A DNA stretch of 64,000 nt, taken from Auanema rhodensis. Its lineage: Eukaryota; Animalia; Nematoda. Location: NCBI GenBank assembly GCA_964057225.1, contig OZ059894.1, positions 16,802,001-16,866,000 of the forward strand, given 5' to 3'. Under the pieces are notes generated by a model that was not told where the DNA came from, ran no database searches, and saw nothing but the letters and a program-made list of their open reading frames with translations. Below are positions 2,485-52,000 of the stretch, piece after piece. The position numbers and the translations under genes are program-made. Within the stretch, counting starts at the first letter, position 1. Each line of letters starts with the position of its first letter.

Positions 2485-3152
2485 ATGCCTAGGTATGTTG
2501 TGCTGATATCTGGTAAGAGAAAGTCGGGGAAGGACTTTTGCTCGAAGATACTATCTGATGCCCTTGGTTGTAGTTATAAATGTGCTGTCATTGGGGTATC
2601 TCACAGTTTGAAAGAAGAGTATGCCATGAAACATGGTTTGTTCTCCTAAAGAAATGCTTTGTTATGAAAGTTACAGGACTGAAATACGAAGAGTTGTTAA
2701 CTGATAGTTTATACAAAGAAGAACACAGAGCTAAGATGATTATTTGGGGTGAAGCCAAGAGAAATTCTGATCCTGGCTATTTTTGCAGGTATAGCAGTAC
2801 TATTCCTAACTGTTGTAAATTCAAAGAAAAAACACACAGGGCTGCACTTAGTTCCGCAAAAAACGCTGTTATTGCTGTTATATCGGACTGTCGAAGAAAA
2901 TCTGACATGGAAGTTTTTAAATCATTGTTTTCTGATAGAAATGTTACTACAGTTCGAATAGAAGCTAGGGAAGAGACACGTATGAAGCGTGGCTATAAAT
3001 TTGTTGATGGTGTGGATAATACTGAATCAGAATGTGGATTGGACGATTATAAATTTGACTATATTATTAAGAATGATGAATGTGTTGAGGATGTTTCAGC
3101 AGTTCTCCAAGAGCTAGCGACCACAATAATAGGAAAACTTAATGAAAATTAA
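2485..3152 (+). CDS. PMVK: Phosphomevalonate kinase, animal type (3 exons)
   Basis: P-loop ISGKRKSGKDF from ATG 2485; YKEEHRAKMIIWGEAKRNSDPGYFCR, ISDCRRKSD and GVDNTESECGLDD match animal PMVK. Introns ~2636-2676 and 2789-2839. Confidence 0.95.
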
Positions 3153-5931: not shown

Positions 5932-6786
5932 ATGGTTCGACCAATTTTGATATGCTCTGTTCTCTTTCTCATGCTTTGCATATATGCAAGCGATGCTCAA
6001 AAAGTATTGAAGTTCTACAAAGGCTTGAAGAAAAAAATATTAAAGGTATGTTTAGAAGCGCCTTCACAGGCCAACATTTCTATTATAGGAGCACAATAAG
6101 CTTCGATCGAAATTTGCTAAAGGAAAGTTTACTGATGGCCAAGGTAACAAATTCCCTAAGGCTAAGGATATGATCAGACTTGTATGAAAACATAGCATAT
6201 AATATTTTATTTTATTAAATATTCAATCAGGTTTGGAATAAGAAAATGGCCAAAACAGCTGAAAAGGCTGCAAAGGCCTGCAAGATGGGTCCTCCAATCA
6301 ACAATAACTTGGGAGAAAGCCAGTTCACCGCCTTCTCTAACAGTACTATCGCCGATCCCGAAAATTTGGTATACAACTGAGCAAAGCTGATTGCAGTTCC
6401 ATTATGCTTATTTAGGCTTTGGATGCTGTTAAGGCATGGCTTAAGGAATTCGATCAGGGATGGAACCCTAATCTTTTAACCAAATCTGAAATTGGACATG
6501 CTATCCAAGTCTGAGCCTAAAATGAAGTCAAAAACTTAATATGCCATTTAGGCTGTATGGGGAAGAACTCGTAAAATCGGATGTGCTATTGTATCCTGTG
6601 ATGGTGGAAAAGGAGTTATGGTTGTCTGCGAATATGCACCAAAGTAAGTTGTCATCTGAGATCTGGCATATAATTGGCCATTATAGGGGTAATATGGCAA
6701 ACAAAAAGGCTTACAAACCTGGAAAAACCTGCCAAGCTTGTCCGAAACGCTTCAAATGCAACAAGAAGAAAGGACTATGCGGATAA
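5932..6786 (+). CDS. CAP/SCP/TAPS (venom-allergen-like) secreted protein 1; single domain, very Lys-rich, 6 exons
   Basis: Signal peptide MVRPILICSVLFLMLCIYASDA; EHNKLRSKFAKG, VWNKKMA, LGES, IGHAIQ|AVWGRTRKIGCA, VVCEYAPKGN, C-terminal CQACPKRFKCNKKKGLCG*. TATA-like TATAAAA at ~5893. Confidence 0.93.
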
Positions 6787-8011: not shown

Positions 8012-8170
8012 ATGATGAGTCCGCGGCTGCTGCTGGCTATTTCGATAATAGGTATGATTTAGCTTTTGAATTATACGTTTTTTTCTTGAATTTCGAGAAA
8101 AAAAACCTTTTTTTCAGTCCTTCTTTTCCTATTACTGTTAATTATATATTTTTATATATAATAAATTGTG

Positions 8171-8201
<31 letters not shown>

Positions 8202-11200
8202 TATATATATATATATTATTTAATTAAATTAATATATAATATTAAATTTTATGTATTATTTTTGTTTAAAATTAAAACTCTTAATATTTAGCTGTCATCA
8301 GCGCTGATATAACCGGATCTGGTTCTGCACAGGATTTCTTAAATTGTAAGTCCTCCTAGTATAACTTTCTGTATTTCTTAAAATTCATGTTATAGATTTG
8401 CAATCTGCAAATAATGTGCAAGGTTATGCTTTACCAGATGGCGCTCTCATTCAGCCACAATTGTTACATAAGCTTCCCCCTGGATTCTCCGTCAGCTCTC
8501 GCCCTGTCGTAACTAAGATTCCGGGTGTCATGATGAGTATGACTAGCAACGCCGGTTATGGTCCTATAAATAACAACCAGATATCTAATGTAATATCTGG
8601 AATGCAATTGGACAATGGAGAAGTACCTTGCGAAAAAACTTTGTTCGCACTCAGAGAAGTAACAGGACTTGGAATGGCACAACTTGCTGCTGCCACAAAC
8701 CAGATTTTGGGTCAGCTTGCACTAGCTATCGGAAGTATAACTGGTCACACCAACAGTTTACCTCCTAGCACTACTGGGGATATCTCAGATTATGACCTGT
8801 CATTTTACTTAATGACTGGTACTTTACCAGGAAAACTCTATTCACCTGAATACACGTTGAATAATATCCTGATAACTTCTGATTCATCTCCTTTCTGGAA
8901 CCCCGTTGATGGATGGAACACCGAGCCTACTGATGAAACTCCTGATCATATTGATCTGGAAAACACATTCAGCTATTTCAATATTCCAAACTTCATACCT
9001 CACCAAATCGGATATCCTACATTGACACCAGTAGACTTAGGATACGAACCAACTAATCCCTCAACCAACCCTGGTAGTCCAGTGGTTTTCAAAATTACCA
9101 TTCCAGATTATCTAGCACCATTCTTCCCAAATGGCCAGATTCCTCCTCAGTTCCCTGTTTTCATGCAGACTCTGATTATAACCGTTCAGAAACATCACAT
9201 ATCACCAGAAACTATGCAGATTCCACCCGCTCTTATGATGTTTTTCCCGGGCAGAAATGTTCCTTTCGAAGTTATACAATTTGTATATCAAACGTTGGTC
9301 GAGCACACCTTGTATATTCGCTATATTCCTCTTGAGCTGGCTCAATATTTCCCTAACGGTCAATTCCCACAAACGTTCATCGATTTCATTTTGAAATTGA
9401 GCACTGGTGTCTCTATCCCACCTGAGGATGTTGTCCCAACCTTGGTTATTTTCTTCCCAAGCGGAACAGTCCCAGAGCCAGTGGTGAACTTTGTCATAAA
9501 CTTTATTTTCACTCACTCTTTACCGGAAACTGACGAGGAACAGGAAAACCTTCCAACAGATTCGTATCCAGAAACAATGTCTCCAGAAGAGATCTCAGTT
9601 CCTGAAGAATTGGCACCTTACTTCCCAGAAGAAGAAATTCCCGAAGAATTTATCGACTTCCTCAAGGATTTGGCACCCTATCTTGAACAACAAGGAAGCA
9701 TGCCAATAACATTCCAAATTCCTGAAAAATTAATGATTTTCTTCCCAACTGGTGAAATACCATTACCAATTTTAAATTTCATACAAAACTTCATCATTAC
9801 ATGGCATAAGCCAACAGACACACCACAGCCCATTGATGACTCCCCACTTCTGAAACCAACAGATGAAGAACCAGATGAGGAAACTGATGACGATCTCAGC
9901 GTAGAAAACGATGAAGAATTCCCAACTGATTCATACCCAGAAGGCACAAGTCCTGAAGAGATCACCGTACCTGAAGAGCTCGCCCCATACTTCCCACAAG
10001 GACAGATTCCACAGCTTTTCATCGACCTCTTGAAGGATCTTACCTTCACTCTTGATTCACCTGACACCAACAGATATACCGTCACTTTGCCGATTGAGTT
10101 CACATTCCTCTTCCCAGATGGCCAAATCCCAGAACCAGTTCAGAAGTTTATCGTGAACTTCATTCTCACTTGGCATCACCCAACCCACAAGCCAACAAGT
10201 CCCATGGATCCAACTGGAGAAGAGCCAGAGTATGGAGAACCAACATACGAAGACCCAACAGGAGAAGAGCCAGTGTATGGAGAACCAACAAACGAATACC
10301 CAACTGGAGAAGAGCCAGTGTATGGAGAACCAACAAACGAATACCCAACTGGAGAAGAACCTGTATATGGAGAACCAGACGAGGAAACTGATGACGATCT
10401 CAGCGTAGAAAACGATGAAGAATTCCCAACTGATTCATACCCAGAAGGCACAAGCCCTGAAGAGATCACCGTACCTGAAGAGCTCGCTCCATACTTCCCA
10501 CAAGGTGAGGTTCCAGAAGAATTTGTCGACATGTTAAAGGAACTTACTTTCACCCTTGATTCACCTGGCACCAACAGATTCACCATCCCACTGCCTATGG
10601 AGTTCACATTCCTCTTCCCTAATGGTCAAATCCCAGAACCAGTTCAGAAGTTTATCATGAACTTCATTCTCACTTGGCATCACCCAACACACAAGCCAAC
10701 AGGCCCCGTTGGTGATCACCCAACCCACAAGCCAGTAGGCCCCGTTGCTGATCACCCATTAGAATTCATTCCTGATGAGTATTCACCTGAGGATATCTCA
10801 GAATATGAAGCCACATACGAGGACCCAACAGGTGAAGAGCCAGTGTATGGAGAACCAACAAACGAATACCCAACAGGACAACCACTAGAGGATATAGAAC
10901 CAAAATACGATTTCCCAACAGGAGAAGAGCCAGTGTATGGAGAACCAACAAACGAATACCCAACTGGAGAAGAACCTGTGTATGGAGAACCAGACGAGGA
11001 AACTGATGACGATCTCAGCGTAGAAAACGATGAAGAATTCCCAACAGATTCATACCCAGAAGGCACAAGTCCTGAAGAGATCACCGTACCTGAAGAGCTC
11101 GCCCCATACTTCCCACAAGGACAGATTCCACAGCTTTTCATCGACCTCTTGAAGGATCTTACCTTCACTCTTGATTCACCTGACACCAACAGATATACCG

Positions 11201-14200
11201 TCACTTTGCCGATTGAGTTCACATTCCTCTTCCCAGATGGCCAAATCCCAGAACCAGTTCAGAACTTTATCGTGAACTTCATTCTCACTTGGCATCACCC
11301 AACACACAAGCCAACAAGTCCCATGGACCCAACTGGAGAAGAGCCAGAGTATGGAGAACCCACATACGAAGACCCAACAGGAGAAGAGCCAGTGTATGGA
11401 GAACCCACATATGAAGACCCAACAGGAGAAGAGCCAGTGTATGGAGAACCAACAAACGAATACCCAACTGGAGAAGAACCTGTATATGGAGAACCAGACG
11501 AGGAAACTGATGACGATCTCAGCGTAGAAAACGATGAAGAATTCCCAACTGATTCATACCCAGAAGGCACAAGTCCTGAAGAAATCACCGTACCTGAAGA
11601 GCTCGCCCCATACTTCCCACAAGGACAGATTCCACAGCTTTTCATCGACCTCTTGAAGGATCTTACCTTCACTCTTGATTCACCTGACACCAACAGATAT
11701 ACCGTCACTTTGCCGATTGAGTTCACATTCCTCTTCCCTGATGGTCAAATCCCAGAACCAGTTCAGAAGTTTATCGTGAACTTCATTCTCACTTGGCATC
11801 ACCCAACCCACAAGCCAACAGGACCCGTTGCTGATCACCCATTAGAATTCATTCCTGATGAGTATTCACCTGAGGATATCTCAGAATATGAAGCCACATA
11901 CGAGGACCCAACAGGAGAAGAGCCAGTGTATGGAGAACCAACAAACGAATACCCAACTGGAGAAGAGCCAGTGTATGGAGAACCAACAAACGAATACCCA
12001 ACTGGAGAAGAACCTGTATATGGAGAACCAGACGAGGAAACTGATGACGATCTCAGCGTAGAAAACGATGAAGAATTCCCAACTGATTCATACCCAGAAG
12101 GCACAAGTCCTGAAGAGATCACCGTACCTGAAGAGCTCGCCCCATACTTCCCACAAGGACAAATTCCACAGCTTTTCATCGACCTCTTGAAGGATCTTAC
12201 CTTCACTCTTGATTCACCTGACACCAACAGATATACCGTCACTTTGCCGATTGAGTTCACATTCCTCTTCCCAGATGGCCAAATCCCAGAACCAGTTCAA
12301 AACTTTATCGTGAACTTCATTCTCACTTGGCATCACCCAACACACAAGCCAACAAGTCCCATGGAGCCAACTGGAGAACAGCCAGAGTATGGAGAACCCA
12401 CATACGAAGACCCAACAGGAGAAGAGCCAGTGTATGGAGAACCAACAAACGAATACCCAACTGGAGAAGAACCTGTGTATGGAGAACCAGACGAGGAAAC
12501 TGATGACGATCTCAGCGTAGAAAACGATGAAGAATTCCCAACTGATTCATACCCAGAAGGCACAAGTCCTGAAGAGATCACCGTACCTGAAGAGCTCGCC
12601 CCATACTTCCCACAAGGACAAATTCCACAGCTTTTCATCGACCTCTTGAAGGATCTTACCTTCACTCTTGATTCACCTGACACCAACAGATATACCGTCA
12701 CTTTGCCGATTGAGTTCACATTCCTCTTCCCAGATGGCCAAATCCCAGAACCAGTTCAAAACTTTATCGTGAACTTCATTCTCACTTGGCATCACCCAAC
12801 ACACAAGCCAACAAGTCCCATGGAGCCAACTGGAGAACAGCCAGAGTATGGAGAACCCACATACGAAGACCCAACAGGAGAAGAGCCAGTGTATGGAGAA
12901 CCAACAAACGAATACCCAACTGGAGAAGAACCTGTATATGGAGAACCAGACGAGGAAACTGATGACGATCTCAGCGTAGAAAACGATGAAGAATTCCCAA
13001 CTGATTCATACCCAGAAGGCACAAGCCCTGAAGAAATCACCGTACCTGAAGAACTTGGAGAATCGTTCCCAGAAGGTGAGGTTCCAGAAGAATTTGTCGA
13101 CATGTTAAAGGAACTTACTTTCACCCTTGATTCACCTGGCACCAACAGATTCACCATCCCACTGCCTATGGAGTTCACATTCCTCTTCCCTAATGGTCAA
13201 ATCCCAGAACCAGTTCAGAAGTTTATCATGAACTTCATTCTCACTTGGCATCACCCAACACACAAGCCAACAGGCCCCGTTGGTGATCACCCAACCCACA
13301 AGCCAGTAGGCCCCGTTGCTGATCACCCATTAGAATTCATTCCTGATGAGTATTCACCTGAGGATATCTCAGAATATGAAGCCACATACGAGGACCCAAC
13401 AGGAGAAGAGCCAGTGTATGGAGAACCAACAAACGAATACCCAACAGGAGAAGAGCCAGTGTATGGAGAACCAACAAACGAATACCCAACTGGAGAAGAG
13501 CCAGTATATGGAGAACCAGAAGAGGAAACTGATGACGATCTCAGCGTAGAAAACGATGAAGAATTCCCAACTGATTCATACCCAGAAGGCACAAGCCCTG
13601 AAGAAATCACCGTACCTGAAGAACTTGGAGAATCGTTCCCAGAAGGTGAGGTTCCAGAAGAATTCGTCGACATGTTAAAGGAACTTACTTTCACCCTTGA
13701 TTCACCTGGCACTAACAGATTCACCATCCCATTGCCTATGGAGTTCACATTCCTCTTCCCTAACGGTCAAATCCCAGAACCAGTTCAGAAGTTTATTATG
13801 AACTTCATTCTCACTTGGCATCACCCAACCCATAAGCCAACAAGTCCCATGGACCCAACTGGAGAACAGCCAGAGTATGGAGAACCAACATACGAAGACC
13901 CAACAGGAGAAGAGCCAGTGTATGGAGAACCAACAAACGAATACCCAACTGGAGAAGAGCCAGTGTATGGAGAACCAACAAACGAATACCCAACTGGAGA
14001 AGAACCTGTATATGGAGAACCAGAAGAGGAAACTGATGACGATCTCAGTGTAGAAAACGATGAAGAATTCCCAACTGATTCATACCCAGAAGGCACAAGC
14101 CCTGAAGAAATCACCGTACCTGAAGAACTTGGAGAATCGTTCCCAGAAGGTGAGGTTCCAGAAGAGTTCGTCGACATGTTAAAGGAACTTACTTTCACCC

Positions 14201-17200
14201 TTGATTCACCTGGCACCAACAGATTCACCATCCCATTGCCTATGGAGTTCACATTCCTCTTCCCTAATGGTCAAATCCCAGAACCAGTTCAGAAGTTTAT
14301 CATGAACTTCATTCTCACTTGGCATCACCCAACCCACAAGCCAACAAGTCCCGTGGACCCAACTGGAGAACAGCCAGAGTATGGAGAACCCACATACGAA
14401 GACCCAACAGGAGAAGAGCCAGTGTATGGAGAACCAACAAACGAATACCCAACTGGAGAAGAACCTGTATATGGAGAACCAGACGAGGAAACTGATGACG
14501 ATCTCAGTGTAGAAAACGATGAAGAATTCCCAACTGATTCATACCCAGAAGGCACAAGCCCTGAAGAAATCACCGTACCTGAAGAACTTGGAGAATCGTT
14601 CCCAGAAGGTGAGGTTCCAGAAGAGTTCGTCGACATGTTAAAGGAACTTACTTTCACCCTTGATTCACCTGGCACCAACAGATTCACCATCCCATTGCCT
14701 ATGGAGTTCACATTCCTCTTCCCTAATGGTCAAATCCCAGAACCAGTTCAGAAGTTTATCATGAACTTCATTCTCACTTGGCATCACCCAACCCACAAGC
14801 CAACAAGTCCCGTGGACCCAACTGGAGAACAGCCAGAGTATGGAGAACCCACATACGAAGACCCAACAGGACAAGAACTAGAGGATATAGAACCAAAATT
14901 CGATTTCCCAACTGGAGAAGAACCTGTATATGGAGAACCAGACGAGGAAACTGATGACGATCTCAGTGTAGAAAACGATGAAGAATTCCCAACTGATTCA
15001 TACCCAGAAGGCACAAGCCCTGAAGAGATCACCGTACCTGAAGAACTTGGAGAATCGTTCCCAGAAGGTGAGGTTCCAGAAGAATTCGTCGACATGTTAA
15101 AGGAACTTACTTTCACCCTTGATTCACCTGACACCAACAGATTCACCATCCCATTGCCTATGGAGTTCACATTCCTCTTCCCTAATGGTCAAATCCCAGA
15201 ACCAGTTCAGAAGTTTATCATGAACTTCATTCTCACTTGGCATCACCCAACCCACAAGCCAACAAGTCCCGTGGACCCAACTGGAGAACAGCCAGAGTAT
15301 GGAGAACCAAACGAGGAGACTGATGACGATCTAAGCGTAGAAAACGATGATGAGGAAGAATTACCAAAAGATTCTTATCCTCTCAGTGTTACTCCAGACG
15401 AGATTACTGTTCCCGAAGAACTTGGAGAATCGTTCCCAGAAGGTGAGGTTCCAGAAGAATTCGTCGACATGTTAAAGGAACTTACTTTCACCCTTGATTC
15501 ACCTGACACCAACAGATTCACCATCCCATTGCCTATGGAGTTCACATTCCTCTTCCCTGGTGGTCAAATCCCAGAACCAGTTCAGAAGTTTATCATGAAC
15601 TTCATTCTCACTTGGCATCACCCAGAACAATCGTCTCATCCATCCAAGGAACCTGAGCAAAACAGTCCATTCTCCCCTAACATGTACCCCGAAGATATGA
15701 GTCCTGAAGAAATTACTGTTCCTGAAGAACTCACTCCTTACTTCCCACAAGGAGAAGTTCCAGATCAATTCATCATCATGTTGCAGAAGCTCACATTCAC
15801 TCTTGATTCGCCCACAACAGATCGTTTGAAGTTCCCATTCCCAATGGAATTCACAGTTCTCTTCCCCGGAGGAAAAATTCCGTTGCCAGTTCAACAGTTC
15901 ATCACAAACTTTGTTCTTACTTGGCATAAACCACATGAACCTTCTCATCCAGTTGATGAACCCGAAGAGGAATCGGATGACGATCTCAGTGTTATAAACC
16001 CTGATGAGGAAAATCCATTCCCTACTGACTCTTACCCTATCGGAATGACTCCTGATGAGATCACAGTACCTGAAGAGCTCGCCCCATACTTCCCACAAGG
16101 ACAAGTCCCAATTCAATTTATCATCATGTTGCAGAAGCTCACATTTACTCTTGATTCACCTACAACGGATCGGTTAAACTTCCCATTCCCAATAGAATTC
16201 AAGGTTCTCTTCCCCGCAGGAAAAATTCCAAAGCCAATTCAACAGTTCATCATCAACTTTGTTCTCACTTGGCACAAACCTACAACGACATCTCCAGTTT
16301 CTGATAAGCCTGGAACTTTATATCCATCGACTATGACTCCTGATCAAATAACAGTGCCAATAATGTTTGGACAGTTCTTCCCAGGTGGTCAGATTCCAGT
16401 ACAGTTCATCATAAGCGTGAAGAAATTAGCTCAAACGATTGATAGCCCATATACTGATCGTTTCAGCTACCCATTCCCATTCGAATTCACATCAATGTTC
16501 CCAGCTGGAAATATGCCTACTGAAATCAAACAGTTCCTTAAGATTTTCATTATGACTTGGCATAAGCCAGATAATCAGTTCCCAACTGATTCTTATCCCA
16601 CTAACATGTCACCAGATCAAATCACAGTCCCATCTGATCTTGCCAAGTACTTCCCAGAAGGCAAAATTCCACAGCAATTCATTGTCTACTTGCAACAACT
16701 GGCACCAACCCTTGATCAGCCATTCACCGATCGTTACAACATCCCATTCCCATTCCAATTCTCAGGATTGTTCCCTGGTGGTAAGGTACCAGACCAGGTT
16801 AAGAGCTTTATCTTAACTTTCATCATCACATGGCACAAGCCATTGCCATTAGTTCCATCTACCAACGATGAACCTACCACTACTTCTGAGGATTTATCTG
16901 ACATTAAGGTACCTGAAGAACTCGGACAGTACTTCATTGGTGGATCTATTCCAATTCAATTCATCATATTCTTGAAAACATTGACTAAGGAGATTTCCCC
17001 CGGACATATTCCACCTATTTCTATTCCTGTCGAAGTCGTTCAATTGTTCCCTAATAACAATATTCCTCCACAAGTAATCGAATTTATTCAAAACTTCTTG
17101 ATGACCTGGTTGAATCCAACCAACCCTACTACCAATGTTGTGTCAATCTCCGTACCTCCTGAGTTGGGAATATACTTCCCCGGAGGTACTGTGCCCATGG

Positions 17201-20200
17201 AATTTTTGGTTTTCCTTCAAGATATCGCACCATCAGGCGAACATCCAATTACTATTAACCCTGATGGCTCCTTCACTATGCCACAAGAAATCTACAAATT
17301 CTGGCCTAGTGGACTTGTTCCACAACCTGTTTTGGTCTTCTTGCAAACTGTTATACAGCAATGGCAAACCCAGTCTCAAAACGACCCTCAATCACCAGAT
17401 GCTATAAACATCCCTCCCGAGATAAGTCTTTATTTCCCAGGACGACAGATTCCTCAATCATTCTTAATTTTCCTTCAAAACTTAGCACCAGGTGGAAGCA
17501 ATCCAGCTACAATGAACCCTGACGGTTCCTTCACACTGCCTCAGGAGGTATTCCAATTCTTCCCTGGAGGCCAAGTTCCACAACCTGTAATGGACTTCAT
17601 CATGTCAATTCTGAAAAAATACGTCACCATGCAATCTGGTCCAGCACAGACAATCAGCATTCCAGGCAATCTTGGGTTATACTTCCCTGGAGGAGTAGTA
17701 CCACCAACATTCATGACATTCATACAGACTATTGCCCAGAAAAAACTTTTGAAGACAAATCCTGATGGAAGCATTATTCCTCCACCGGGAATCGAACAAT
17801 TCTTCCCTTCAGGAATAGTTCCACCACCAGTTCTTGCTGTTTTTGAGCAACTTCTTTCAAATCAGCCACCAAAGAAAACCGATACTCCTGGCACTATGAC
17901 CATTGAGTTCCCTCTTAGTTTAGGACAATTTTTCCCAGGTGGAGTGATTCCTGAAGATTTCAAGATCTTCATCTTATCACTTGGACCAAGTGGATCTAAT
18001 GAGCTCAAACCATCACCTGACGGATCATACGCAATCCCACAAGGAATTCTCACCTTCTTCCCAACTGGTGATATTCCAGCTCCAGTTATGCAATTTATTC
18101 AAACTTGTATATCCACCTTCAAGAACCCATCAAACACAAAAAACATGATCACTATTCAAATTCCCGCTTCTCTTGTTGCATATTTCCCAGGAAACGTTGT
18201 ACCACAAGCTTTCGTCACATATCTTCAGAACTTATCCCCACAAGGATCAAATCCATTGATTATTAGACCAGACGGATCTTGGTCATTACCTCCTGGGCTT
18301 AATGTTCTCTTCCCCGGATACATGGTACCACAACCTGTTATGGATTTCATCTCAAATCTTGTGATGCAATGGCAAACAGGAAAACCAACACCAGATTCAG
18401 ATATCATGAACTTTAAGGAATTCACCATTCCAGCGACTATTAACCACTATTTCCCTGAAGGAAAAGTTCCCCACAGCTTCATGATGTTCTTGCAAGGATT
18501 AGCACCAAACGGAAGCAACCCTGTAGAAATTCATCCAGATGGAACTATGACTATTCCGTCCCAGATTACATCATTCTTCCCAGGCGGAATATGTCCTCCT
18601 GAGGTTATAGAAGTTGTACAAAACTTTGTTCATTCATGGTATAAGAAACCAATACAGTCTTTTAACCCTGGACAGTTGCCGTTTTTTCCGTTAGGCGGAA
18701 CTGAGAGTCCGCCGAACCAAGTATCTCCTCCAGCTGACGGTACCGAAATCCCCACCATTAACACTCCAGAAGAACAACCAACTGATGATTCTGAAACTCT
18801 AGTGGAAGAGCCCGAAATACCTATTGACGGTTCCGAAACTCCAGTCGACGAAACAGAAGTACCAACTGATGATTCTGAGACTCTAATTGAAGAACCCGAA
18901 ATACCTATTGACGGTTCCGAAACTCCAGTCGACGAAACAGAAGTACCAACTGATGATTCTGAGACTCTAATTGAAGAACCCGAAATACCTATTGACGGTT
19001 CCGAAACTCCAGTCGAAGGATCAGAAGAACCAATTGATGATTCTGAGACTCTAGTAGAAGAGCCTGAAATACCTATTGATGGCACTGAGACTCCAGTCGA
19101 AGGATCTGAAGAAGATACTGAAGATTCTGAATATCCTGATGAAGAATACGAAGAACCTACTGAAGCTTCAGAAACTCCAATAGATGAATCCGAAGAACCA
19201 ACTGAAGATTCTGAAAACCCTGACGAGGAATACGAAGAACCAACTGATGATACCGAAACTCCAGAAGAAGAATCGGAAGAGTCAACTGGTAATGTAGAAA
19301 CGCCAGGATTTGTAGCAGCAGATACAAACAGTCACACTGGTCCACAAATGCCAGGAAACGATGATGATTATAATTATTATGAAGAGAACACCGGAACTGA
19401 GCCTTCAGACGAATCGCCTGGCGATGATGATGAAGAATCAGAGGAAAACACTGGAACATCGCCTGATGACGATGATGAAGAGTACGAAGAAAACACTGGA
19501 ACATCGCCTGATGACGATGATGAAGAGTACGAAGAAAACACCGGAGGATCGCCTGGCGATGATGATGAAGAATCAGAAGAAAACACTGGAACATCGCCTG
19601 ATGACGATGATGAAGAGTACGAAGAAAACACTGGAACATCGCCTGATGACGACGATGAAGAGTACGAAGAAAACACCGGAGGATCGCCTGATGACAATGA
19701 TGAGGAATCGGAAAATAACACCGGAACATCGCCTAATGACGATGTTGAAGAATCTGAACAGAATACTGGAACATCACCTAATAGTGATGATGGAGAGTAC
19801 GAATATCCTGAAGGAGATCCTAGCTACCCATATGAGGATACCTATGAGGAATATGATCCAGAATATGATGAAGAGAACACCGGTGGCGGAAAACCAGGAG
19901 GAAACCCAGGTGGACAAGGTGGAAGCCCTGGTGGAAATGGAGGAAACCTAGGTGGAAATCCTAATGGAAACCCAGGTGGACAAGGTGGAAGCCCTGGTGG
20001 AAATGGAGGAGACCTAGGCGGAAAACCTAATGGAAACCAAGGTGGACCAATTAAAGGAAATCCTGCTGGAACTGGTAACGGACTAACACCGGGTAACGGT
20101 GGAAATGGAGGTGGACTTGGAACCGGAACAGCAGGAGGCAATCCGTCTGGCATGGGTACTGGCACAGCAGGCAATCCGTCCGGCATGGGTACTGGCACAG

Positions 20201-21537
20201 CAGGAGGCAATCCGTCCGGCATGGGTACTGGCACAGCAGGCAATCCGTCCGGCATGGGTACTGGCACAGGAGGAGGCAATCCCTCCGGCATGGGTACTGG
20301 CACAGGTGGAGGAAGCCCATCCGGCTTTGGTACTGGCACAGGAGGAGGAAGCCCATCCGGATTTGGTACTGGCACAGGAGGAGGAAGCCCATCCGGCTTT
20401 GGTACTGCTACCGGAGGCGGCTCTGGATCAGGCTTTGGTACTGCTACCGGAGGCGGCTCTGGATCAGGCTTTGGTACTGCTACCGGAGGCGGCTCTGGAT
20501 CAGGCTTTACTACATCGACAGGTGGAGGTAGTGGAAGCAATATCGGTTTTGGAACAGGAGGAAACGGTGGAATCAGCTTTGGTACTGATTCCGGAGGAGG
20601 CAGTGGATCCAGTTTTGTTACTGACACCGGATCTGCAACAGGATCTAGTTGGGTCAGTAACACTGGCTCAAGTAGTGCCAATGAATGGAAAAAGAATGCT
20701 CGGCTAAATCCTGCTCAAATCCAACAAGTCATATCGGTACGTCAAAATTGAAAACTGGATTATAAACCAATCTTTAATTTAGGCTCACAATAAACCAAGA
20801 TCCCAAATTGCCAAGGGCTTATTCTTGGATGGAACAAACTCAACAATGCCATCTGCCGCTAACATGTTCCGAGTGGTAAACATTACATAGATTAAATCAG
20901 TATTTGATTGATATGAATTCTAGAATTGGGATGAGACACTTGCAAAGAGTGCTCAGCGTGCGTCCAACACTTGCTCACCTAAATCCATTAACTTCACCAC
21001 TGTTGGTGAAAATACTTATTATGTAAAATTGGACAGATTGATTAAGAATCCACAATTTCATGTATGTCTTAAAAATAGTTCTGGATAACTATATGAACTT
21101 TTAGGCTGTGAAAGCTGTTGAATCATGGTTCGATGAGTTAGCCAATAATCCATGGAACGAACAAAGTAGCATGGCTGGTATGCAAGAAGGTTTCCAAGTG
21201 AGTTTACTGATTTATGCAGAAATATTTTACTTAAAATCACCTTTCTAACTATATTTCTAATATAATGCTTAAGGTTGCTTGGGGCCGTACTCGTAAAGTT
21301 GGTTGCGGAGTTACAAACTGTGAAAGTGGTGTAGCGGTTTTGGTCACTTGTCACTATTTGCCAAAGTAAGATTTTTTTGAATTTTAATTATAGTTTTTTA
21401 ATATTATTTGATATTTTTTTAATAAAAATGCTTTCAGACCAAAAGACTTCGGACCAATCACTTATATACCTGGACAAATGTGCTCGCAATGTACAGGAAA
21501 TACTGTTTGTAATCCGAACACAGGACTATGCATATAA
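8012..21537 (+). CDS. Giant secreted repeat protein (~4,316 aa) with a C-terminal CAP/SCP domain, 8 exons
   Basis: Exons 8012-8051 and 8292-8345 (signal peptide MMSPRLLLAISIIAVISA), 8396-20736 (12,341 bp, open), then CAP exons 20783-20875, 20924-21061, 21105-21197, 21274-21365, 21438-21537: AHNKPRSQIAKG, NWDETLA, VGEN, VAWGRTRKVGCG, VTCHY, CSQCTGNTVCNPNTGLCI*. All junctions are GT-AG and in phase. Confidence 0.9.
8173..8215. repeat. (TAA)n(TA)n microsatellite in intron 1 of the giant CAP gene
   Basis: taataataataa...atatatatat read directly. Confidence 0.9.
9088..18651 (+). repeat. Coding array of 26 copies of a ~70-80 aa domain with twin P-x2-[LF]-x2-[YFL]FP-x-G-x-[IV]P motifs
   Basis: Counted in the translation. 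The 12 central copies (~9860-15620) are near-identical in DNA, with periods 459/504/534/570/615 bp; flanking copies are diverged. Confidence 0.9.
18778..19880 (+). repeat. Acidic coding repeats (PTDDSETLIEEPEIPIDGSETPVDETEV; ENTGTSPDDDDEEYE)
   Basis: 84-bp and 45-bp tandem units visible in DNA and protein. Confidence 0.9.
19882..20670 (+). repeat. Gly-rich coding repeats (GGNPGGQGGSPGG; GGNPSGMGTGT; GGGSPSGFGTGT; GGGSGSGFGTAT)
   Basis: 33-36 bp tandem units directly upstream of the CAP domain. Confidence 0.9.
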
Positions 21538-21887: not shown

Positions 21888-23903
21888 ATGAAACTTGCTA
21901 CTATCTTTATTACATGGCTCGTAATAGGTAAGCTTATATCTCTTATTATATTTTCGATTACTATTACCTTTATTTCAGTTGATGTAGATGCGATTGCAAT
22001 TAATCGTAGGCGAAAACAGTCATTGAGACGGGAATGTAAGTACAATTTAGTTTATTTCCATTTAAACTTCTTTCAGTTCTGCTCTCTCAAAACAGTGGAA
22101 ATGCCTTCGGTGTGCTGCTGGAAAATGTCTCTAGACAATATGATGGATCCAAGTCCATTTTAACAGATTCCACTTGGTATGATGGTCGATCGATTGATTC
22201 CCGAGCTGCTCAGAAGAAAGGAGGAAATAAGCCCCAACAGAAACCAGCTCACAAGCCCGCACCCAAGCCAGCTCACAAGCCCGCACCCAAGCCAGCTCAG
22301 AAGCCAGCACATAAGCCAGCACAAAAGCCAGCACACAAACCAGCGAAAAAACCAGTAAAAAAGCCAGTGAAGAAACCAGCAAAAAAGCCAGTGAAGAAGC
22401 CAGGATCCAAGCCACAACCTTCAAAAAAACCTGGTAATAAACCGGCAAAAAAACCTGGTCAGAGACCGGGAAAGAGACATCGCAAGAGGCGTTGTCAAAG
22501 GCACAGAAGACCTGGCAAGAGACCTGGCAGAAGACGTTGTAGAAAGCGCCGAAAAAGGCCAGGCAAAAAACCCAAACCAAATAAGAAGAAGAAGCCAGGT
22601 AAGAAACCAAAACCTCACCAAAAAAAAAAGAAAAAGACCAAGCCTGGTTCTAAACCAAAACCAGAATCCAAACCCGAGTCTAAGCCCGATTCAGGTTCAA
22701 ATTCAAAGCCGGAGTCAAAGCCGGAGTCGACGCCTGATTCGAAGCCGGAGTCGAAGCCGGAGTCGAAGCCTGAGTCAAAGCCTGATTCTAAGCCTGAGTC
22801 GAAGCCGGAGTCAAAGCCTGATTCTAAGCCTGATTCTAAGCCTGAGTCTAAGCCAGAATCGAAGCCTGAGTCGAAGCCGGAGTCGAAGCCGGAGTCGAAG
22901 CCGGAGTCCAAACCAGAGTCGAAACCAGAGTCAAAGCCAGAGTCGAAACCTGATTCAAAGCCTGAGTCAAAGCCTGAGTCAAAGCCTGAGTCGAAGCCTG
23001 AGTCGAAGCCTGAGTCAAAGCCTGAGTCGAAGCCTGAGTCGAAGCCTGAGTCAAAGCCGGAAACAAACCCTGATTCTAATCCTGAAACTTCAGCAAAACC
23101 AAAACCTGGGGCTGTTAAGTTCAATCCGAAAGCAATTCAGGAGATTCTTGATGTAAACTGATTTTTTACACTTTTAGAAATTCTTCAATAAATGAAAATA
23201 TTCAGGAGCATAACGATTTACGTTCTCGTCTTGCTAAAGGAAGCTTTAAGGATGGCAACGGAGTTTCAAAGCCTGAAGGGAGTGATATGCTGAAATTGGT
23301 TCTTATCTTTTCGAGATATAACATACAAAATCAATTTAAGGAATGGGATCCCAAATTGGCCAATTCAGCTCAAGAAGTTACTGATACATGTGAATTCAAA
23401 CACTCTGGAAAACCAGATCTTGGTGAAAATTTACATACATATACATCGTCTAAAGGCATAACAGATCCTCAAGCAGGAGTAAGTTAAATTTACTGTTTAA
23501 CAACGTATTGATGTTATATTTAGGGTAAAAAGGCCGTTGCTAGTTGGAACAGCGAGTTTGATAAGTATGGCTGGTCAAGCATGAAGCTAGAAGATAAGAT
23601 TGGACATGCTACTCAAGTAAATCTCTAAATAGATTAACTCAAAATAACATTGAAATATTCTAATACAGGATGTATGGAGTACTACGAAACGTGTTGGATG
23701 CGCCATTACCATATGCGAAGAGGGAAAACGCGGTTTAGTTGCATGTCATTATCAACCGATGTTAGAAAAGTAATGAAAACCAATTAAATTGCAATTCTTT
23801 TAGGGGTAACTACAAAAATAGAGATGTTTATGAAGCTGGAGCAGTGTGTTCGGATTGTCCAAGTGGCACAACATGCGAACGCTCAACAGGATTATGCGTT
23901 TAA
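21888..23903 (+). CDS. CAP/SCP/TAPS secreted protein 3 with Lys/Arg/Pro-rich and KP(E/D)S-repeat N-terminal region, 8 exons
   Basis: Exons 21888-21927, 21979-22035, 22077-23152, then CAP exons: [40 protein letters not shown]|[39 protein letters not shown]. Confidence 0.92.
22229..23088 (+). repeat. 12-bp coding tandem repeats: [16 protein letters not shown], an Arg/Lys block, then ~30 KP(E/D)S
   Basis: AAGCC(T/G)GAGTC(G/A) units; translation of ORF 22112-23161. Confidence 0.92.
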
Positions 23904-24274: not shown

Positions 24275-26981
24275 TTATGACAGCTTTTTTTCGCATCGTC
24301 TGCCAGTGAAGCCGTTAGGGCACATACATTTTACTTCTCCTCTCCCAGTTTTTAAACATGTTGAATTGTTTTTACAAAAACCAACACATATATCTAGAAT
24401 AAATGGATTAATCTTGTAATTGAATGAGTTCAATTATACCTGAACATGTGTATCCATTACCAACATATCCAGGCTTGCATTTACATGAATATCTGAAACA
24501 AAATTCTTTTTTGAAACTTTTTTCTATTCAAAATCCTACCTCGGTTTGTTTCCCTCATCTGGTAAATCCATACAAGCGGCTAACCAATGGCAACTATGTT
24601 TTCCAGATTTACATTGATTTGTTGATTGACATTGTATAAGAGAATTAGAGCCTGTAAAAGTATTATAAAATATTTTATTTAAAGAGAGAAAATTATAGTT
24701 TGAACCTGTTTGATAAGTTGTCGTTCCTGTTGGACATGATTTACATAAACGACTATCGTATTCATCTTCATAAGTGCCATAATCGCAAGCATTGCATTGA
24801 AAGGTTGTTATATTTAAAAATGTACCCGGATAACAAGTTCCTAAATTTGATTGCATTGATTTGTTTTCTATGAATTGAGGATAATTCTTAATTTTCATGT
24901 ATATTTCCATAATAATATTGATTCAATATGTCACTGTTCTTTTTTTTTCAGTATTCAACTTTGATTTAAAGAAGTGAAGGGATTAGTCTTACTGATCGTA
25001 CAGTCATCCAAAGATATACTTTCCTCCTTTAAAGTGGTGAGACCTGGAGGACACAGCATACAGACGCTATCTGTAGACGATTTGAACGACCCAATCGGAC
25101 AGCTGACACATTTCTGTCCGTCTGGAGAGCGTTGAGATCCTGTTGGACAATTTTCTGAAAGAAAAGCAGCTTGTCCTCGTTTTTCTGAAGATGAAGAAGA
25201 ACATATTCCATTTCTATTCTTTAAGATTGAAATTGGCATACGTTTTCATTTAAATGGCACAAATGGAATGACGTCATTTTTCTTCCAAATTAATTATCAA
25301 TTGATTAGAAATGATGTTCTATTATTATAACTTATTCTCATTTTAAATTTTCTTATCATAAAGACAAAGAACAGCTTTACTTGTTCTTTTCCAGTGACTA
25401 TCTATTACATGTAACAAGTTTTTGTTTTACTGAAAAAAAAGATGCTTCATGTAACAAACCTAAACAATGATCAATTGATGTAGAATTTAAGTATAATGGA
25501 ACTGTTCCAGGTGGACATGATAAACAGCTAAACATAAATATTAATTTAATACAATAAGAAAAGAAAGCTCACCGATTACTTCCACTTTCTGGCTGATATC
25601 CACGAAAACTACATGGCTCACAGAATTTGGACGCCGAATCATAGAAGAAGCCAGGAGGGCAGATAGCTTAAAACACTTGTTGAACATTGGTTTTAAGTTT
25701 CTATGATGTATATACCATAACAATCAGAATGCTTGATCGCTCCCATAATTGATGTGGTTGTCTTAATCGAATTAAAGCTACAAATCAAATATACGAAATA
25801 AAATTACCAATGGACATTGATGACAAAATACTTGACCAGGCTCAGGTTGATATTCTCCGCGGCCACATATTTGGCATTGTGCTTCATGGAAAAAGTAGCC
25901 TGGTTTGCATTTGCCTATGATACCATTACTATGAAGTATTTTTGATCAAACGAGTGCAAACAATATAAATTATATTCTTTCAAGTTATTGTGATATGTGT
26001 ATCTTGATTGAAACATGAACATGAGATTAGTTTTTGCCTGTAAATATACATAAAATGTAAAATTTATTTATATTGTGTATATGATTAGATATATTGATAA
26101 GAAAGGACAAGTGAATGCTATGAATATTGTTATTACATATAGATATTTGATGGTTATGATGATGTTCATGATGATGATGATGATAATAATGATGATGATT
26201 TTGATAGTGTTTTCTTAAGGTTTTCAAAGTGCAACAAGACGATCAACATCAATAGGTTCACGTTCCACCATTGGTTCATCACGCAATTTAAAATCCTTAC
26301 GGCATTTATCTCCGTCAATAAGTGTAGCTCCCTTATAACAGAAGAATGCTTCGTCAAATGATAATATTGAAGTTGGTTTACCCAAAACCTAAATGATTTC
26401 GTTTTTGGTAATTGTATCATGATCATCTTCTACCTTTAATGCGTTGGTGTATTGGAAAATTCCTCCTTTTAATCCAATTTGGGTGACAACACTAACTGTG
26501 GAAGTGGCATCAACCTTTGCATTCTTGATTGGATCTCTGATATAAAGATAATACTTTAAACATTCTTGAAATAAAGCTACCTTTCAGCAATGAAAGTAAC
26601 ATTGATTCTATACTGAGATGACCCCATAGATTCTCCAGTTACTTGAGCTTTTCCGCAATCATTAGAACTTCTGAAAGTGAAAACATAACAAAAAAATAAT
26701 CTAGAAGAATCTATACCGTTCGCCACCACATATCAGCCAATGCTTGTTAATGAACTTCAATGAAGCTAAGACACTACTTCTCATTACTGAGCTCCATCTT
26801 AAGAAAATAATCAAATTGTGTTAGAAATGTTAACTCACTTTTCAATTTTTTCAATTTCTGCTGTATTAGCATTATCATAATTAATCTGAAGTCTAGCTAC
26901 TCGAACTGCTGGCGAGACAAACTCATCTTGTGTAAATGTAATTTGAACAAGAAATAAAATAGAAAAAATATATTTCAACAT
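24275..26981 (-). CDS. Secreted protein with several GCC2/GCC3 (ephrin-receptor-like Cys) repeats and two C-terminal EGF-like domains
   Basis: TTTCAG then ATG 26981, signal peptide MLKYIFSILFLVQITFT; repeats such as CVSCPIGSFKSSTDSVCMLCPPGLTT and CNACDYGTYEDEYDSRLCKSCPTGTTT; EGF NQCKSGKHSCHWLAACMD...CKPGYVGNG and CMCPNGFTGRRCEKKLS*. Confidence 0.85.
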
Positions 26982-49058: not shown

Positions 49059-52000
49059 TTACATTCTTAATGAATGGATTGGCAAATGTTTCTTCCGGCG
49101 TACGCGCTTGTGTGGTTGTTCTTCTTGTTGTTGTATGAGAGTTTCTGGGGTTTGTTCTTCTTTATCGACGCTTTCAGCATCATATGGTGTGCCATAAATC
49201 AGCATAAATCTGAAACAAAAGATTTTGCAAAGATGATATGTAGGTTTACATACTTTCCGTCGATTTCAAGTTTGCAAACCAAGTCGCCGGCAAAATGTAC
49301 TGTTTGAGCAAAATCTCCTAGTGATACAACACTTTCAAAGGGATGGTCAAACATTTCTTCACTTTTAGACTGAATTAGATAGAGATATTTGTAAACATGG
49401 TAAACAAGGATAAATACCTGTATCATATTAGCAATTTTTCCAATATTGCACATATTGAATACAGGATCCTTTTTAACGTCTTGAACAACATCTTCAACTA
49501 AGTTATTTAACATCAAGTTACAACAAACATAACCTGAATGAAGTTAATATTAGAGATTATAATTGTTTTAATTTATTTACCGGAAGGATTGTGAAAACAT
49601 GTTGGAAGAGGTACTTCTAGTTTTGGAGGATAATAGAACTTTGATGCTTTACCATCACTATATGGTGTCTTTTTTCCTCTATCAATCTGAATTATTTGAT
49701 TTAATTCAATTAGTTAATACTTGAAAACAAACACGTGAACCAGATCCACCAACCAAAGGTTTTGTTCCATTTGAATCAGGACCATCATTCTCTTCGGAAT
49801 CATCCTCATTGGAAAACTAAACTCAATTTAAATTTTAGCTAAAAAAACAAATTATTCTTTTTTCACCTCTTCTTCGATTTCAACATCATTTTCTTCTAAT
49901 TCCTTCTTAGCATTTTCCGCCGATTCATCTTGTTCTTCCTCAGATCCGTTTTGAGTTTTTTTACTTTGAAGTTTTTTTCGATCAACTGTTGCATCTTTTA
50001 CATTTCCTTTTTTAACGTTCTGAGCGGATGTGCTGACTTTTTTTTTTGATTTTGCGTCGCTTGTTTTTTCTTCTTTCGGTTTTGATTTAGTTTTGGGCTT
50101 TTCCTTTTTTGTTTTTTGATTGGGCTCCTTTTCTTTTCTTTTTTCTTGCTTTTCTTCTTTCTTTGACAGCTTATCCGATTTCCTATCATGCTTCTTCTTT
50201 TTGCTCTTCTTTGATGAGTAAGAACTTATATCATTTTCATCCTCATTTTCGAATTCTTCTTCTTCGTTGTCGGCAATGATATCCTCAATATCTTCTTCTT
50301 CTTCTTCATTTTCATTTGAAAAAGTTTTCTCCTCATCTGAGTCAAAGTACTCATCAGCATCCTTTACTTTTCCCTTTTTGCTTAATTTGTGTTTCTTTTC
50401 TTTCTTCTTCTGAAACACATTATAAGAAAAATATGAATTAGTGACATACCGTCTTTTCCTTTTCTTTTTTCTTTTTTTTATCTTTTACTTCTTCCTTATT
50501 GCTTCCTTTTTTGCTATTTTTATCATTCTTCTTTTTCTCTTTCGTTTTCTTCTTAAGCTTGTCTTTTTTATTTTGTTTTGATTTTTTCTGTATTAATTCA
50601 AATAAAAATAAATAAATCAGAGTTTATTTACCTTGTTCTTTCCATGTTCATCTTCATCGTCTTCATCATCTTTCTCTTCGTCATCCTCATCCTCATGTTT
50701 ACCTTTTGTTTTTTTCTTTTTTTTCTTTCCCTTTTCTTCGCTATCTTTATCTTCATCAGAATTCTTCTCATCCTCATCGCTTTCTGTCTTTTTATGCTTT
50801 TTCTTGCCATCTTCGTCTTCATCTTCGTCATCGTCTTTTTCTTCGTCTTCGTCTTCATTCTCATCTTCATCTTCATCTTCATCATCGTCTTCATCTTCAT
50901 TTGATTCGTCGTCGTCCTCATCAGAGTCGTCATCATCTTCATTACTGTCGTCATCTTCTTCTGGTCGCTCCGAATATGTATTCGGACTTGGAATTACAGG
51001 ATAAGTGTCAGTGGGTACAGGAGGAGCAGGAGCATAAACTGCTTGATTGGGTTGAGGTGGTGGAGGTGGCGGCGGAGGTGGAGGTGGTGGAGGAACAGTG
51101 GGAGTCACAGGAGGAGCCGAATTATAATTTCCCGTATTTGTCAAACGGTACTTATCATTCACAGCGTTTCTCTGATCATTCTGTTCATCATATCTCTCAT
51201 TGTATTTCTGCTTCTTTTTTCTATTTTTTGGATTAGCTTGATCTCGAGCTATTTTACCTCTTTCAAGTTCTAACACCGTTTCAGCTGTTCCGCTATGCTC
51301 TGTTACTGTCTCTTCCACAAATCTCTGAAAGAAAAAACAATACTGGTTAAATAAGCTATAATTGATCTTACCGTATCAGTTTTACCAGCAAAATCAATTA
51401 TTCTTGGTGTGTCAGTACCAAACTGCGTTATTCGATCAAGTATCATTTTGGCTTTTGAGTTTGTCGGATCTGTTGCCGACGTATTGTTCGTTGATGGAGT
51501 AAACTGATGGAAACGATTTGATGGAGTAGCTGTGGTTCCTTTTGTTGTTGTAGTAGTTGTAGCAGTAGTTTGTCTTGTAGTAGTCGCGGTAGTTGCATGT
51601 CTAGTAGTTGTTCGCATCGTTGTTCGAACTGTTGGTTCAATTCCCGAAACACTAGCCCTCTGAGCAAAAGAAGATACAGGTATATTGGAATTAGGTAATG
51701 CTGACGGCCACATCATAGTCTTTAAAGGCGCTGGTGGAACTTGTGGGTTTCTAGGAGGAGTTGGAGCTGAAGAACGAGTGGAAGCACTAGGTTGAGTGCT
51801 GGTTATTGGTTTTAGAGAAGGTAATACGGTTTTAGTCGTAGGATGAACTACCTGTACACAAGAAACATGTTGTTACATATATAAATTGAAAGAAAAAAAC
51901 CTGTGGAGGTCGTTGTAATTCACGATTTACTGGTTTCTTTTCATTGCTAACATCCTTTAATTGTTATGAACTAATTTAGCTCAAACTAATGTTTAAACGT

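What the first reader, a model, noticed from the sequence alone, without database searches (positions are those of the whole stretch)
8012..21537. Giant ~4,316-aa secreted CAP protein whose N-terminal ~4,100 aa come from one 12.3-kb exon
Seen: the 4,117-aa ORF is exon 3 of a spliced gene, with a two-exon signal peptide upstream and a five-exon CAP domain downstream, all in phase. Known: nematode SCP/TAPS proteins are typically ~200 aa (one domain) or ~400 aa (two domains). Here the layout is signal peptide, 26 repeated domains, acidic tract, Gly-rich tract, CAP, in a region where other exons are mostly under 1 kb. Inference: an extracellular scaffold, matrix or adhesive protein, possibly undescribed.
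Basis: partly seen in the sequence, partly recalled or inferred. Interest (0 to 1): 0.9.

Follow-up and report, generated by a model that had tools for sequence, protein, structure and literature searches.

The report
Giant secreted CAP protein, orphan repeats
A nematode-type gene really does encode a 4,316-residue secreted protein in which one 12.3-kb exon adds 26 copies of a previously unseen small helical domain, plus acidic and glycine-rich tracts, in front of an ordinary CAP (SCP/TAPS) domain; what it does is untested.

Summary
The 4,117-codon ORF (8398-20751) is exon 3 of an 8-exon, all GT-AG, in-phase gene (8012-21537) giving 4,316 aa. The model is backed by two flanking CAP paralogues with the same exon sizes and phases. 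The first CAP helix is split by a conserved intron, and its N-terminal half lies at the end of the giant exon.

The product has a signal peptide, a 228-aa unique region, exactly 26 "twin FPxG" domains of about 80 aa, a 423-aa acidic tract, a 45%-Gly tract, and a CAP domain lacking both tetrad histidines. The mature protein is about 474 kDa, net charge -668. It has no transmembrane segment and no furin sites.

The twin domain is under purifying selection (dN/dS 0.05-0.34) and folds confidently (pLDDT 87). It has no Pfam match, no PDB fold match, and no hit among 1.84 billion protein representatives. That library lacks this species and its genus.

Best reading: a secreted, polyanionic, beads-on-a-string matrix or surface-coat protein ending in a CAP binding module. 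The gene model is well supported, but there are no RNA data and the function is inferred. It is a new variant of a known kind. This scan noted the same stretch before (s1-407115, s1-407149).

The parts
8012..8051 (+). Exon 1: start codon and the first 13 codons of the signal peptide, ending in phase 1
   Evidence: This is the only strongly hydrophobic 19-aa window in the protein. Paralogue C has the same 40-nt phase-1 first exon.
8292..8345 (+). Exon 2: end of the signal peptide, with a likely cleavage after the ISA motif, and the start of the mature protein; ends in phase 1
   Evidence: Paralogue C has a 57-nt phase-1 exon 2.
8396..20736 (+). Exon 3: 12,341 nt, 4,113 full codons, the whole 'payload'
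8398..9081 (+). Unique N-terminal region (aa 33-260) with no recognisable family
   Evidence: No Pfam hit. No homologue of 125-400 aa.
9082..18657 (+). Array of 26 twin-FPxG domains (aa 261-3452). Units 4-15 are separated by acidic, Tyr-rich linkers of 44-123 aa built from 15-aa repeats. Units 20-26 abut with 0-5 aa between them.
   Evidence: dN/dS. Fold. Homology of the two halves.
18658..19926 (+). Acidic tract (aa 3453-3875, net charge -161) with 14/28-aa and 15/45-aa repeats
19927..20601 (+). Glycine-rich tract (45% Gly over aa 3876-4115) with 11-12-aa repeats of the GGNPSGMGTGT and GGGSGSGFGT types
20602..20736 (+). End of exon 3, encoding the N-terminal half of the first CAP helix
   Evidence: It aligns with the matching segment of paralogues A and C immediately before the conserved phase-0 intron and the [A/E]HN motif.
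20783..20875 (+). Exon 4 (93 nt): CAP domain, HNxxR motif
   Evidence: The exon size is the same in A and C.
20924..21061 (+). Exon 5 (138 nt): CAP domain
   Evidence: PF00188 profile positions 18-48, 17.1 bits.
21105..21197 (+). Exon 6 (93 nt): CAP domain
21274..21365 (+). Exon 7 (92 nt): CAP domain, GC...C...C.Y.P block
   Evidence: PF00188 profile positions 91-117, 20.5 bits.
21438..21537 (+). Exon 8 (100 nt): Cys-rich C-terminal tail with 4 Cys, then the stop codon
5932..6786 (+). Paralogue A: plain 209-aa basic CAP protein (6 exons, net +27), shown for context
21888..23903 (+). Paralogue C: 565-aa CAP protein (8 exons) whose payload exon encodes a polybasic K/P/R block (net +68 in 158 aa) and SKPE repeats, shown for context

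Best explanation
This is one intact gene for a secreted protein of about 474 kDa and extreme negative charge (net -668).

Shown:
- The N-terminal signal peptide is the only hydrophobic segment, so the product leaves the cell as a soluble protein. It has no transmembrane segment, no hydrophobic C-terminal tail of the kind a GPI anchor needs, and no furin sites.
- The body is a string of 26 independently folding modules of about 80 aa. Each module has four helices and a hairpin and arose from an internal duplication of a 35-40-aa 'hP..L..[YF]FP.G.hP..F..F' half.
- In the younger, N-terminal two-thirds the modules are spaced by disordered acidic Thr/Pro/Tyr linkers. In the last seven units they are packed head to tail.
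- The array grew by tandem duplication. The young units are 85-99% identical in DNA. The old ones are saturated at synonymous sites yet still keep the motif.
- An acidic tract and a flexible Gly-rich tract then tether a C-terminal CAP domain of the non-CRISP type (no tetrad histidines).

Inferred:
- The protein acts as a hydrated polyanionic matrix or surface-coat component. It would serve as a spacer, brush or gel in an apical extracellular matrix or a secretion.
- The CAP domain docks it to a lipid, sterol or protein partner. The many Tyr residues in acidic context are candidate sites for sulfation or cross-linking.
For: - Gene model: all seven junctions are GT-AG and in phase.
- Paralogue support: A has CAP exons of 93/138/93/92/100 nt, the same as the giant. 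C shares the 40-nt phase-1 exon 1, the phase-1 exon 2 and a payload exon ending in phase 0 before [A/E]HN.
- CAP identity: identities to A and C are 32% and 35%, with 8 aligned Cys. Pfam CAP pieces are co-linear.
- Secretion: the signal-peptide window is the only hydrophobic peak, and there are no furin sites.
- Charge and composition.
- Domain reality: 26 HMM hits of 67-113 bits and dN/dS of 0.05-0.34.
- Domain fold: AF2 pLDDT 87, pTM 0.76. The two halves are homologous, hhalign probability 97%, E 2e-11.
- Beads on a string: the three-unit model has folded units (pLDDT 70-87), linkers below 50 and pTM 0.36.
- Tyrosines: 84 of 150 Tyr lie in acidic, base-free contexts.
- Literature: tetrad histidines are dispensable for sterol binding in VALs (PMC6193718). 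C. elegans SCL-12/13 bind cholesterol (PMC10808130). TPST-1 sulfates cuticle collagen, and mucin-like proteins populate the surface coat (PMC11304992).
Against: - No transcript, protein or expression data were available, so splicing and the single-exon status rest on sequence logic and paralogy.
- The function is inferred from composition only. The module has no disulfides, which is unusual for an extracellular domain.
- No homologue with a known role exists to lean on.
- The copy number of the near-identical units could be mis-assembled.
- The spliced CAP domain could not be scored or folded as a whole, so only exon pieces were tested.
Confidence: 0.55

Rival explanations
1. Polyelectrolyte partner model. 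The three tandem CAP genes make one material. The polyanionic giant (net -668) condenses with the polybasic products of neighbours C (block of +68) and A (+27) into a coacervate-like glue, plug or coat, and the shared CAP domain acts as the common docking unit.
For: Opposite charges in adjacent paralogues that share one gene skeleton. All three have signal-peptide-like N-termini. The Gly-rich and repeat tracts are of the phase-separating kind reported for nematode cuticle proteins (PMC9629831). Adhesives made from oppositely charged proteins are known in marine worms (my own knowledge).
Against: There is no evidence of co-expression or interaction. Charge complementarity among three genes may be coincidence. 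The stoichiometry would be very unequal.
Confidence: 0.15
2. The array is partly an assembly artefact. The gene is real, but the number of near-identical units (4-15) is inflated or collapsed, so the true protein differs in length.
For: Units at 9.8-15.3 kb are 85-99% identical over 300 nt, with spacings of 459-615 nt.
Against: No two long copies are fully identical. Spacings differ by whole 45-nt sub-repeats and the frame never breaks. Units 16-26 and 1-3 are unique sequence.
Confidence: 0.12
3. Two separate products. Transcripts of the giant exon end at the in-frame stop at 20751 (intron retained), and the CAP exons are not part of the main product or are a decaying remnant.
For: A stop codon lies 15 nt into the proposed intron. 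No RNA evidence was available.
Against: The CAP exons have no start codon with a signal peptide of their own. The first CAP helix is split across the junction exactly as in paralogues A and C. The donor and acceptor are canonical, the intron is 46 nt and AT-rich like its neighbours. The CAP exons are intact, with all 8 Cys kept.
Confidence: 0.06
4. A lipid-carrier polyprotein in the manner of nematode polyprotein allergens (NPA/ABA-1). A long tandem array of small helical units would be cut into single ligand-binding units.
For: Tandem small helical units, each made by internal duplication, behind a signal peptide. The parallel with NPAs is from my own knowledge.
Against: There is no R-x-K/R-R site anywhere and only seven dibasic pairs. 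No NPA family appeared in Pfam. No NPA structure appeared among the 50 entries listed by the PDB-wide fold search, where the best Z was 4.6.
Confidence: 0.04

Closest known systems
Nematode SCP/TAPS (CAP superfamily, venom-allergen-like / SCL proteins; Pfam PF00188)
   Same: Signal peptide; a CAP domain with the HNxxR motif; a conserved Cys pattern plus a Cys-rich C-terminal tail; tandem gene cluster; absence of the tetrad histidines, as in most helminth VALs (PMC6193718).
   Different: Described helminth members have one, two or at most four CAP domains. This one carries about 4,100 extra residues in front of a single CAP domain, including an orphan domain repeated 26 times.
Yeast Pry1/Pry3-type CAP proteins with long low-complexity regions (my own knowledge)
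   Same: A CAP domain fused to a long, secreted, probably glycosylated, non-globular region. The CAP domain acts as a sterol or lipid binder.
   Different: The yeast extensions are Ser/Thr-rich and short (hundreds of residues). They contain no folded repeat module, and Pry3 is GPI-anchored. Here there is no anchor signal.
Nematode mucin-like and tandem-repeat apical-matrix proteins (PLG-1, DPY-6, epicuticlins)
   Same: Large secreted proteins whose repeats are encoded in one big exon; Thr/Pro-rich linkers; a proposed matrix or surface role (PMC11304992; PMC10802564).
   Different: The repeats here are folded helical modules rather than PTS repeats, the charge is extreme, and the C-terminal domain is CAP.
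Nematode polyprotein allergens (ABA-1 family)
   Same: A secreted tandem array of small helical units, each derived from an internal duplication (my own knowledge).
   Different: No processing sites, no sequence match and no fold match.

Membership tests
CAP / SCP-TAPS superfamily (PF00188) | Match to the CAP profile | tested here: met
   The domain could be scored only exon by exon. Exon 5 gave 17.1 bits on profile positions 18-48 and exon 7 gave 20.5 bits on positions 91-117. The two pieces are co-linear and their rough sum of 37.6 bits exceeds the 21.1-bit cut-off. Paralogue A's exon alone reaches 23.8 bits. The giant's CAP part is 32% identical to A and 35% to C over 188-189 aligned residues.
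CAP / SCP-TAPS superfamily (PF00188) | Secretion signal | tested here: met
   The N-terminal 19-aa window is the only hydrophobic peak (Kyte-Doolittle 1.9) and is followed by a small-residue cleavage motif. No dedicated signal-peptide predictor was available.
CAP / SCP-TAPS superfamily (PF00188) | Conserved disulfide cysteines | tested here: met
   Eight Cys in the last 201 residues align with eight Cys in paralogues A and C.
CAP / SCP-TAPS superfamily (PF00188) | Alpha-beta-alpha sandwich fold | not tested
CRISP-like CAP subgroup | His-Glu-Glu-His tetrad of the central cavity | tested here: not met
   In the three-way alignment the giant keeps both Glu positions but lacks both His. C has all four and A lacks the first His. 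Positions were assigned from my own knowledge of the motifs. Per PMC6193718 this marks the non-CRISP-like type, not exclusion from the superfamily.
Mucins | Long Ser/Thr/Pro-rich O-glycosylated tracts | tested here: inconclusive
   The array region is 15% Pro and 10% Thr, but Glu (13%) dominates the linkers and most residues lie in folded modules. Glycosylation cannot be tested with these tools.
Nematode polyprotein allergens | Tandem units separated by furin-type cleavage sites | tested here: not met
   There are zero R-x-K/R-R sites and no sequence or fold match.
Pfam DUF7919 | A domain-level match | tested here: not met
   The whole-exon score of 37.6 bits comes only from summed weak pieces, with no stretch passing on its own. 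None of the 18 single units matched any family, even at E<=10.

The most novel reading that the evidence does not exclude
The twin-FPxG module is a new extracellular protein fold family restricted to a narrow nematode lineage. The three adjacent CAP genes, one hugely acidic and two basic, together encode a self-assembling polyelectrolyte material such as an adhesive, a plug or a surface coat, in which the shared CAP domain is the docking unit.
Probability: 0.12. Interest if true: 0.75.

Novelty: new variant of a known kind. Interest (0 to 1): 0.5.

Why it matters
CAP/SCP-TAPS proteins are among the most abundant secreted proteins of nematodes, yet their roles are poorly understood.

A member that tethers a single CAP domain to a half-megadalton polyanionic rod suggests the domain can serve as a docking or anchoring module for extracellular material, not only as a free small binder.

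The 80-aa twin-FPxG module is a compact, confidently predicted fold with no detectable relative. It is a clean target for structure determination, and the array shows how a new domain can be amplified into a giant protein by tandem duplication.

If the neighbouring basic paralogues turn out to be partners, the locus would be a genetically compact model for charge-driven matrix assembly.

Tried and rejected
- Homologues of similar length, scored on the divergent repeats (aa 2400-3450 of the ORF): none.
- Domain profile A1 against 1.84 billion representatives: 0 hits at E<=0.001.
- N-terminal 228 aa: none.
- Pfam on the whole exon, on 18 single units, on the N-terminal region and on the acidic plus Gly tracts: only a summed, spurious DUF7919 score.
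- Foldseek against the PDB: no match at E<=0.001, best E 0.96. Exhaustive VIA-align against 48,161 chains: best Z 4.6, which is the noise level for small helical models.
A 508-aa block found no relative.
- PDB sequence search with CAP exon 5: nothing at E<=10.
- A first three-unit alignment made of overlapping windows (A2) aligned out of register and was dropped.
- Species identity: the phosphomevalonate kinase exon upstream has C. elegans as its best hit at only 48%. The protein libraries therefore contain eukaryotes (nr, UniRef, EukProt) but not this species or a close relative. All 'no homologue' results must be read with that limit.
- Notes of other agents name Auanema rhodensis. I did not verify this.
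- Polyprotein, membrane-anchored and pseudogene readings were considered and rejected.
Full report
**Observation**

The window holds an open reading frame of 4,117 codons at 8398-20751 on the + strand. The frame is open from 8365. The exons are 8012-8051, 8292-8345, 8396-20736, 20783-20875, 20924-21061, 21105-21197, 21274-21365 and 21438-21537. They join in phase through seven GT-AG introns of 43-240 nt and give a 12,951-nt coding sequence of 4,316 aa. Exon 3 is 12,341 nt.

The introns have 12-28% G+C. Exon 3 has a median of 45% in 60-nt windows. Its only two dips to about 25% lie inside repeat units that align to the domain profile, so no hidden intron is evident.

**Independent support for the gene model**

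No RNA data could be reached, so I used the neighbours. Two further CAP genes flank the giant on the same strand.

- Gene A (5932-6786) has 6 exons and encodes a plain 209-aa protein.
- Gene C (21888-23903) has 8 exons and encodes 565 aa.

Gene A has CAP exons of 93, 138, 93, 92 and 100 nt, exactly the sizes and phases of the giant's exons 4-8. Gene C matches except for a 101-nt exon 7. Gene C also shares the giant's 40-nt phase-1 first exon, a short phase-1 second exon (57 against 54 nt), and a large 'payload' exon that ends in phase 0 immediately before the [A/E]HN motif.

In all three genes the residues just before that intron align with each other and form the first half of the first CAP helix. 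The last ~15 codons of the 12.3-kb exon therefore already belong to the CAP domain. This argues strongly against a transcript that stops at 20751. A local CAP profile finds no fourth copy in the window.

**The CAP domain**

Only single exons could be handed to the tools by reference.

- Pfam PF00188 matches exon 5 on profile positions 18-48 (17.1 bits) and exon 7 on positions 91-117 (20.5 bits). The two matches are co-linear.
- The equivalent exons of A and C match the same profile positions, and A's exon passes the curated cut-off on its own.
- The three CAP parts are 32-39% identical, with eight aligned cysteines.
- By my reading of the motifs, the giant keeps both glutamates of the cavity tetrad but lacks both histidines. 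C has all four residues and A lacks the first histidine.

According to PMC6193718 most helminth VALs lack these histidines ('non-CRISP-like'), and sterol export does not need them.

**The payload**

After the signal peptide comes a 228-aa region with no relatives. Then come 26 copies of a module of about 80 aa. An HMM built from 18 diverse units scores 26 domains at 67-113 bits and nothing elsewhere in the window.

Each module is a pair of homologous halves of 35-40 aa with the pattern hP..L..[YF]FP.G.hP..F..F. Profile-profile comparison of the halves gives probability 97% and E 2e-11.

Units 4-15 are young:

- They are 85-99% identical in DNA, in two subtypes.
- They form higher-order repeats of 459-615 nt.
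- They are separated by linkers of 44-123 aa made of acidic 15-aa repeats.

Units 16-26 are old, with synonymous sites saturated (dS about 1.9), and units 20-26 abut with 0-5 residues between them.

dN/dS is 0.05-0.34 in every comparison class, so the protein sequence of the module is under selection.

Next come a 423-aa acidic tract (net -161) and a tract with 45% Gly. The mature protein is about 474 kDa with net charge -668 and pI about 4. It has only three cysteines outside the CAP part. It has no second hydrophobic segment, no furin-type site and no RGD motif. Of 150 tyrosines, 84 sit among acidic residues with no base nearby.

**Structure**

AlphaFold2 on one unit, using the 18 units as its alignment, gives pLDDT 87 and pTM 0.76. 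The model has a short helix, a helix, a hairpin, a short helix and a long helix.

A three-unit model repeats the same elements in each unit (pLDDT 70-87). Its linkers fall below 50 and pTM is 0.36, which means beads on a string rather than a rigid rod.

Foldseek against the PDB gave no match at E<=0.001. An exhaustive alignment against 48,161 chains gave a best Z of 4.6, which the tool's own notes class as noise for small helical models.

**Relatives**

None were found.

- No protein of 0.55-1.75 times the length.
- No hit for the domain profile in 1.84 billion cluster representatives.
- No Pfam family for any unit, even at E<=10.
- No metagenome relative.

The whole-exon DUF7919 score has no stretch that passes alone and disappears on single units, so I regard it as spurious.

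One important limit applies. The phosphomevalonate kinase exon upstream finds C. elegans as its best hit at 48%. The libraries therefore hold nr, UniRef and EukProt eukaryotes, but not this species or its close kin. Earlier agents' notes name Auanema rhodensis, which I did not verify. The domain is thus absent from annotated nematode proteomes in these libraries. Whether sister species have it is open.

**How it most likely works**

Shown: it is a single intact gene. The product is secreted, soluble, huge, modular and polyanionic. The modules are selected, independently folding units. The C-terminus is a non-CRISP-type CAP domain.

Inferred: the protein is a matrix or surface-coat component, a hydrated anionic brush or gel. 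Its CAP domain docks it to a lipid, sterol or protein. Its acidic Tyr-rich linkers may be sulfated or cross-linked. For comparison, C. elegans TPST-1 acts on cuticle collagen, and mucin-like proteins are thought to form the surface coat (PMC11304992). C. elegans SCL-12/13 bind cholesterol (PMC10808130).

A more daring variant is that the acidic giant and its two basic neighbours (C carries +68 in 158 aa, A carries +27) condense into one material. I give that about 0.12-0.15.

I give low weight to the polyprotein, two-transcript and mis-assembly readings, for the reasons listed under the rivals.

**Verdict**

This is a new variant of a known kind: a CAP-superfamily protein of unprecedented size that carries an orphan repeated domain.

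I score interest at 0.5. The architecture and the domain are truly unusual and easy to test. However, lineage-specific repetitive secreted giants are common in nematodes, no function is shown, and the close relatives could not be searched.

Noticed in passing
window 21888-23903 (+): Paralogue C is a 565-aa CAP protein. Its 1,076-nt payload exon encodes a polybasic K/P/R block (net +68 in 158 aa, with [10 protein letters not shown]-type repeats and RRCRKRRKR clusters), followed by about 30 SKPE/SKPD repeats. It keeps the full His-Glu-Glu-His tetrad.
   Followed up: partly
window 5932-6786 (+): Paralogue A is a plain 209-aa CAP protein, very basic (net +27, 17% Lys), with the same CAP exon sizes as the giant. 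It lacks the first tetrad histidine.
   Followed up: partly
window 2580-3152 (+): This is the last exon of a phosphomevalonate kinase gene (PF04275). Its best library hit is C. elegans at only 48% identity, which shows that this species and its near relatives are missing from the protein libraries.
   Followed up: partly
window 8052-8291: Intron 1 of the giant gene is 240 nt with 12% G+C, and is largely (AAT)n and (AT)n microsatellite.
   Followed up: no
window 24275-25239 (-): Minus-strand ORF pieces rich in spaced cysteines (EGF-like, and CxxCPxG-type repeats) suggest a secreted or membrane Cys-repeat protein gene just downstream of the CAP cluster.
   Followed up: no
window 10210-15308: The 45-nt (15-aa) acidic sub-repeat varies in copy number between linkers. 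This alone explains the different unit spacings (459, 504, 534, 570, 615 nt) and points to ongoing unequal exchange at two nested scales.
   Followed up: partly
window 50617-51318 (-) and 49852-50418 (-): These are long ORFs encoding poly-Pro followed by very acidic D/E and K-rich low-complexity sequence. They are unrelated to the CAP cluster.
   Followed up: no
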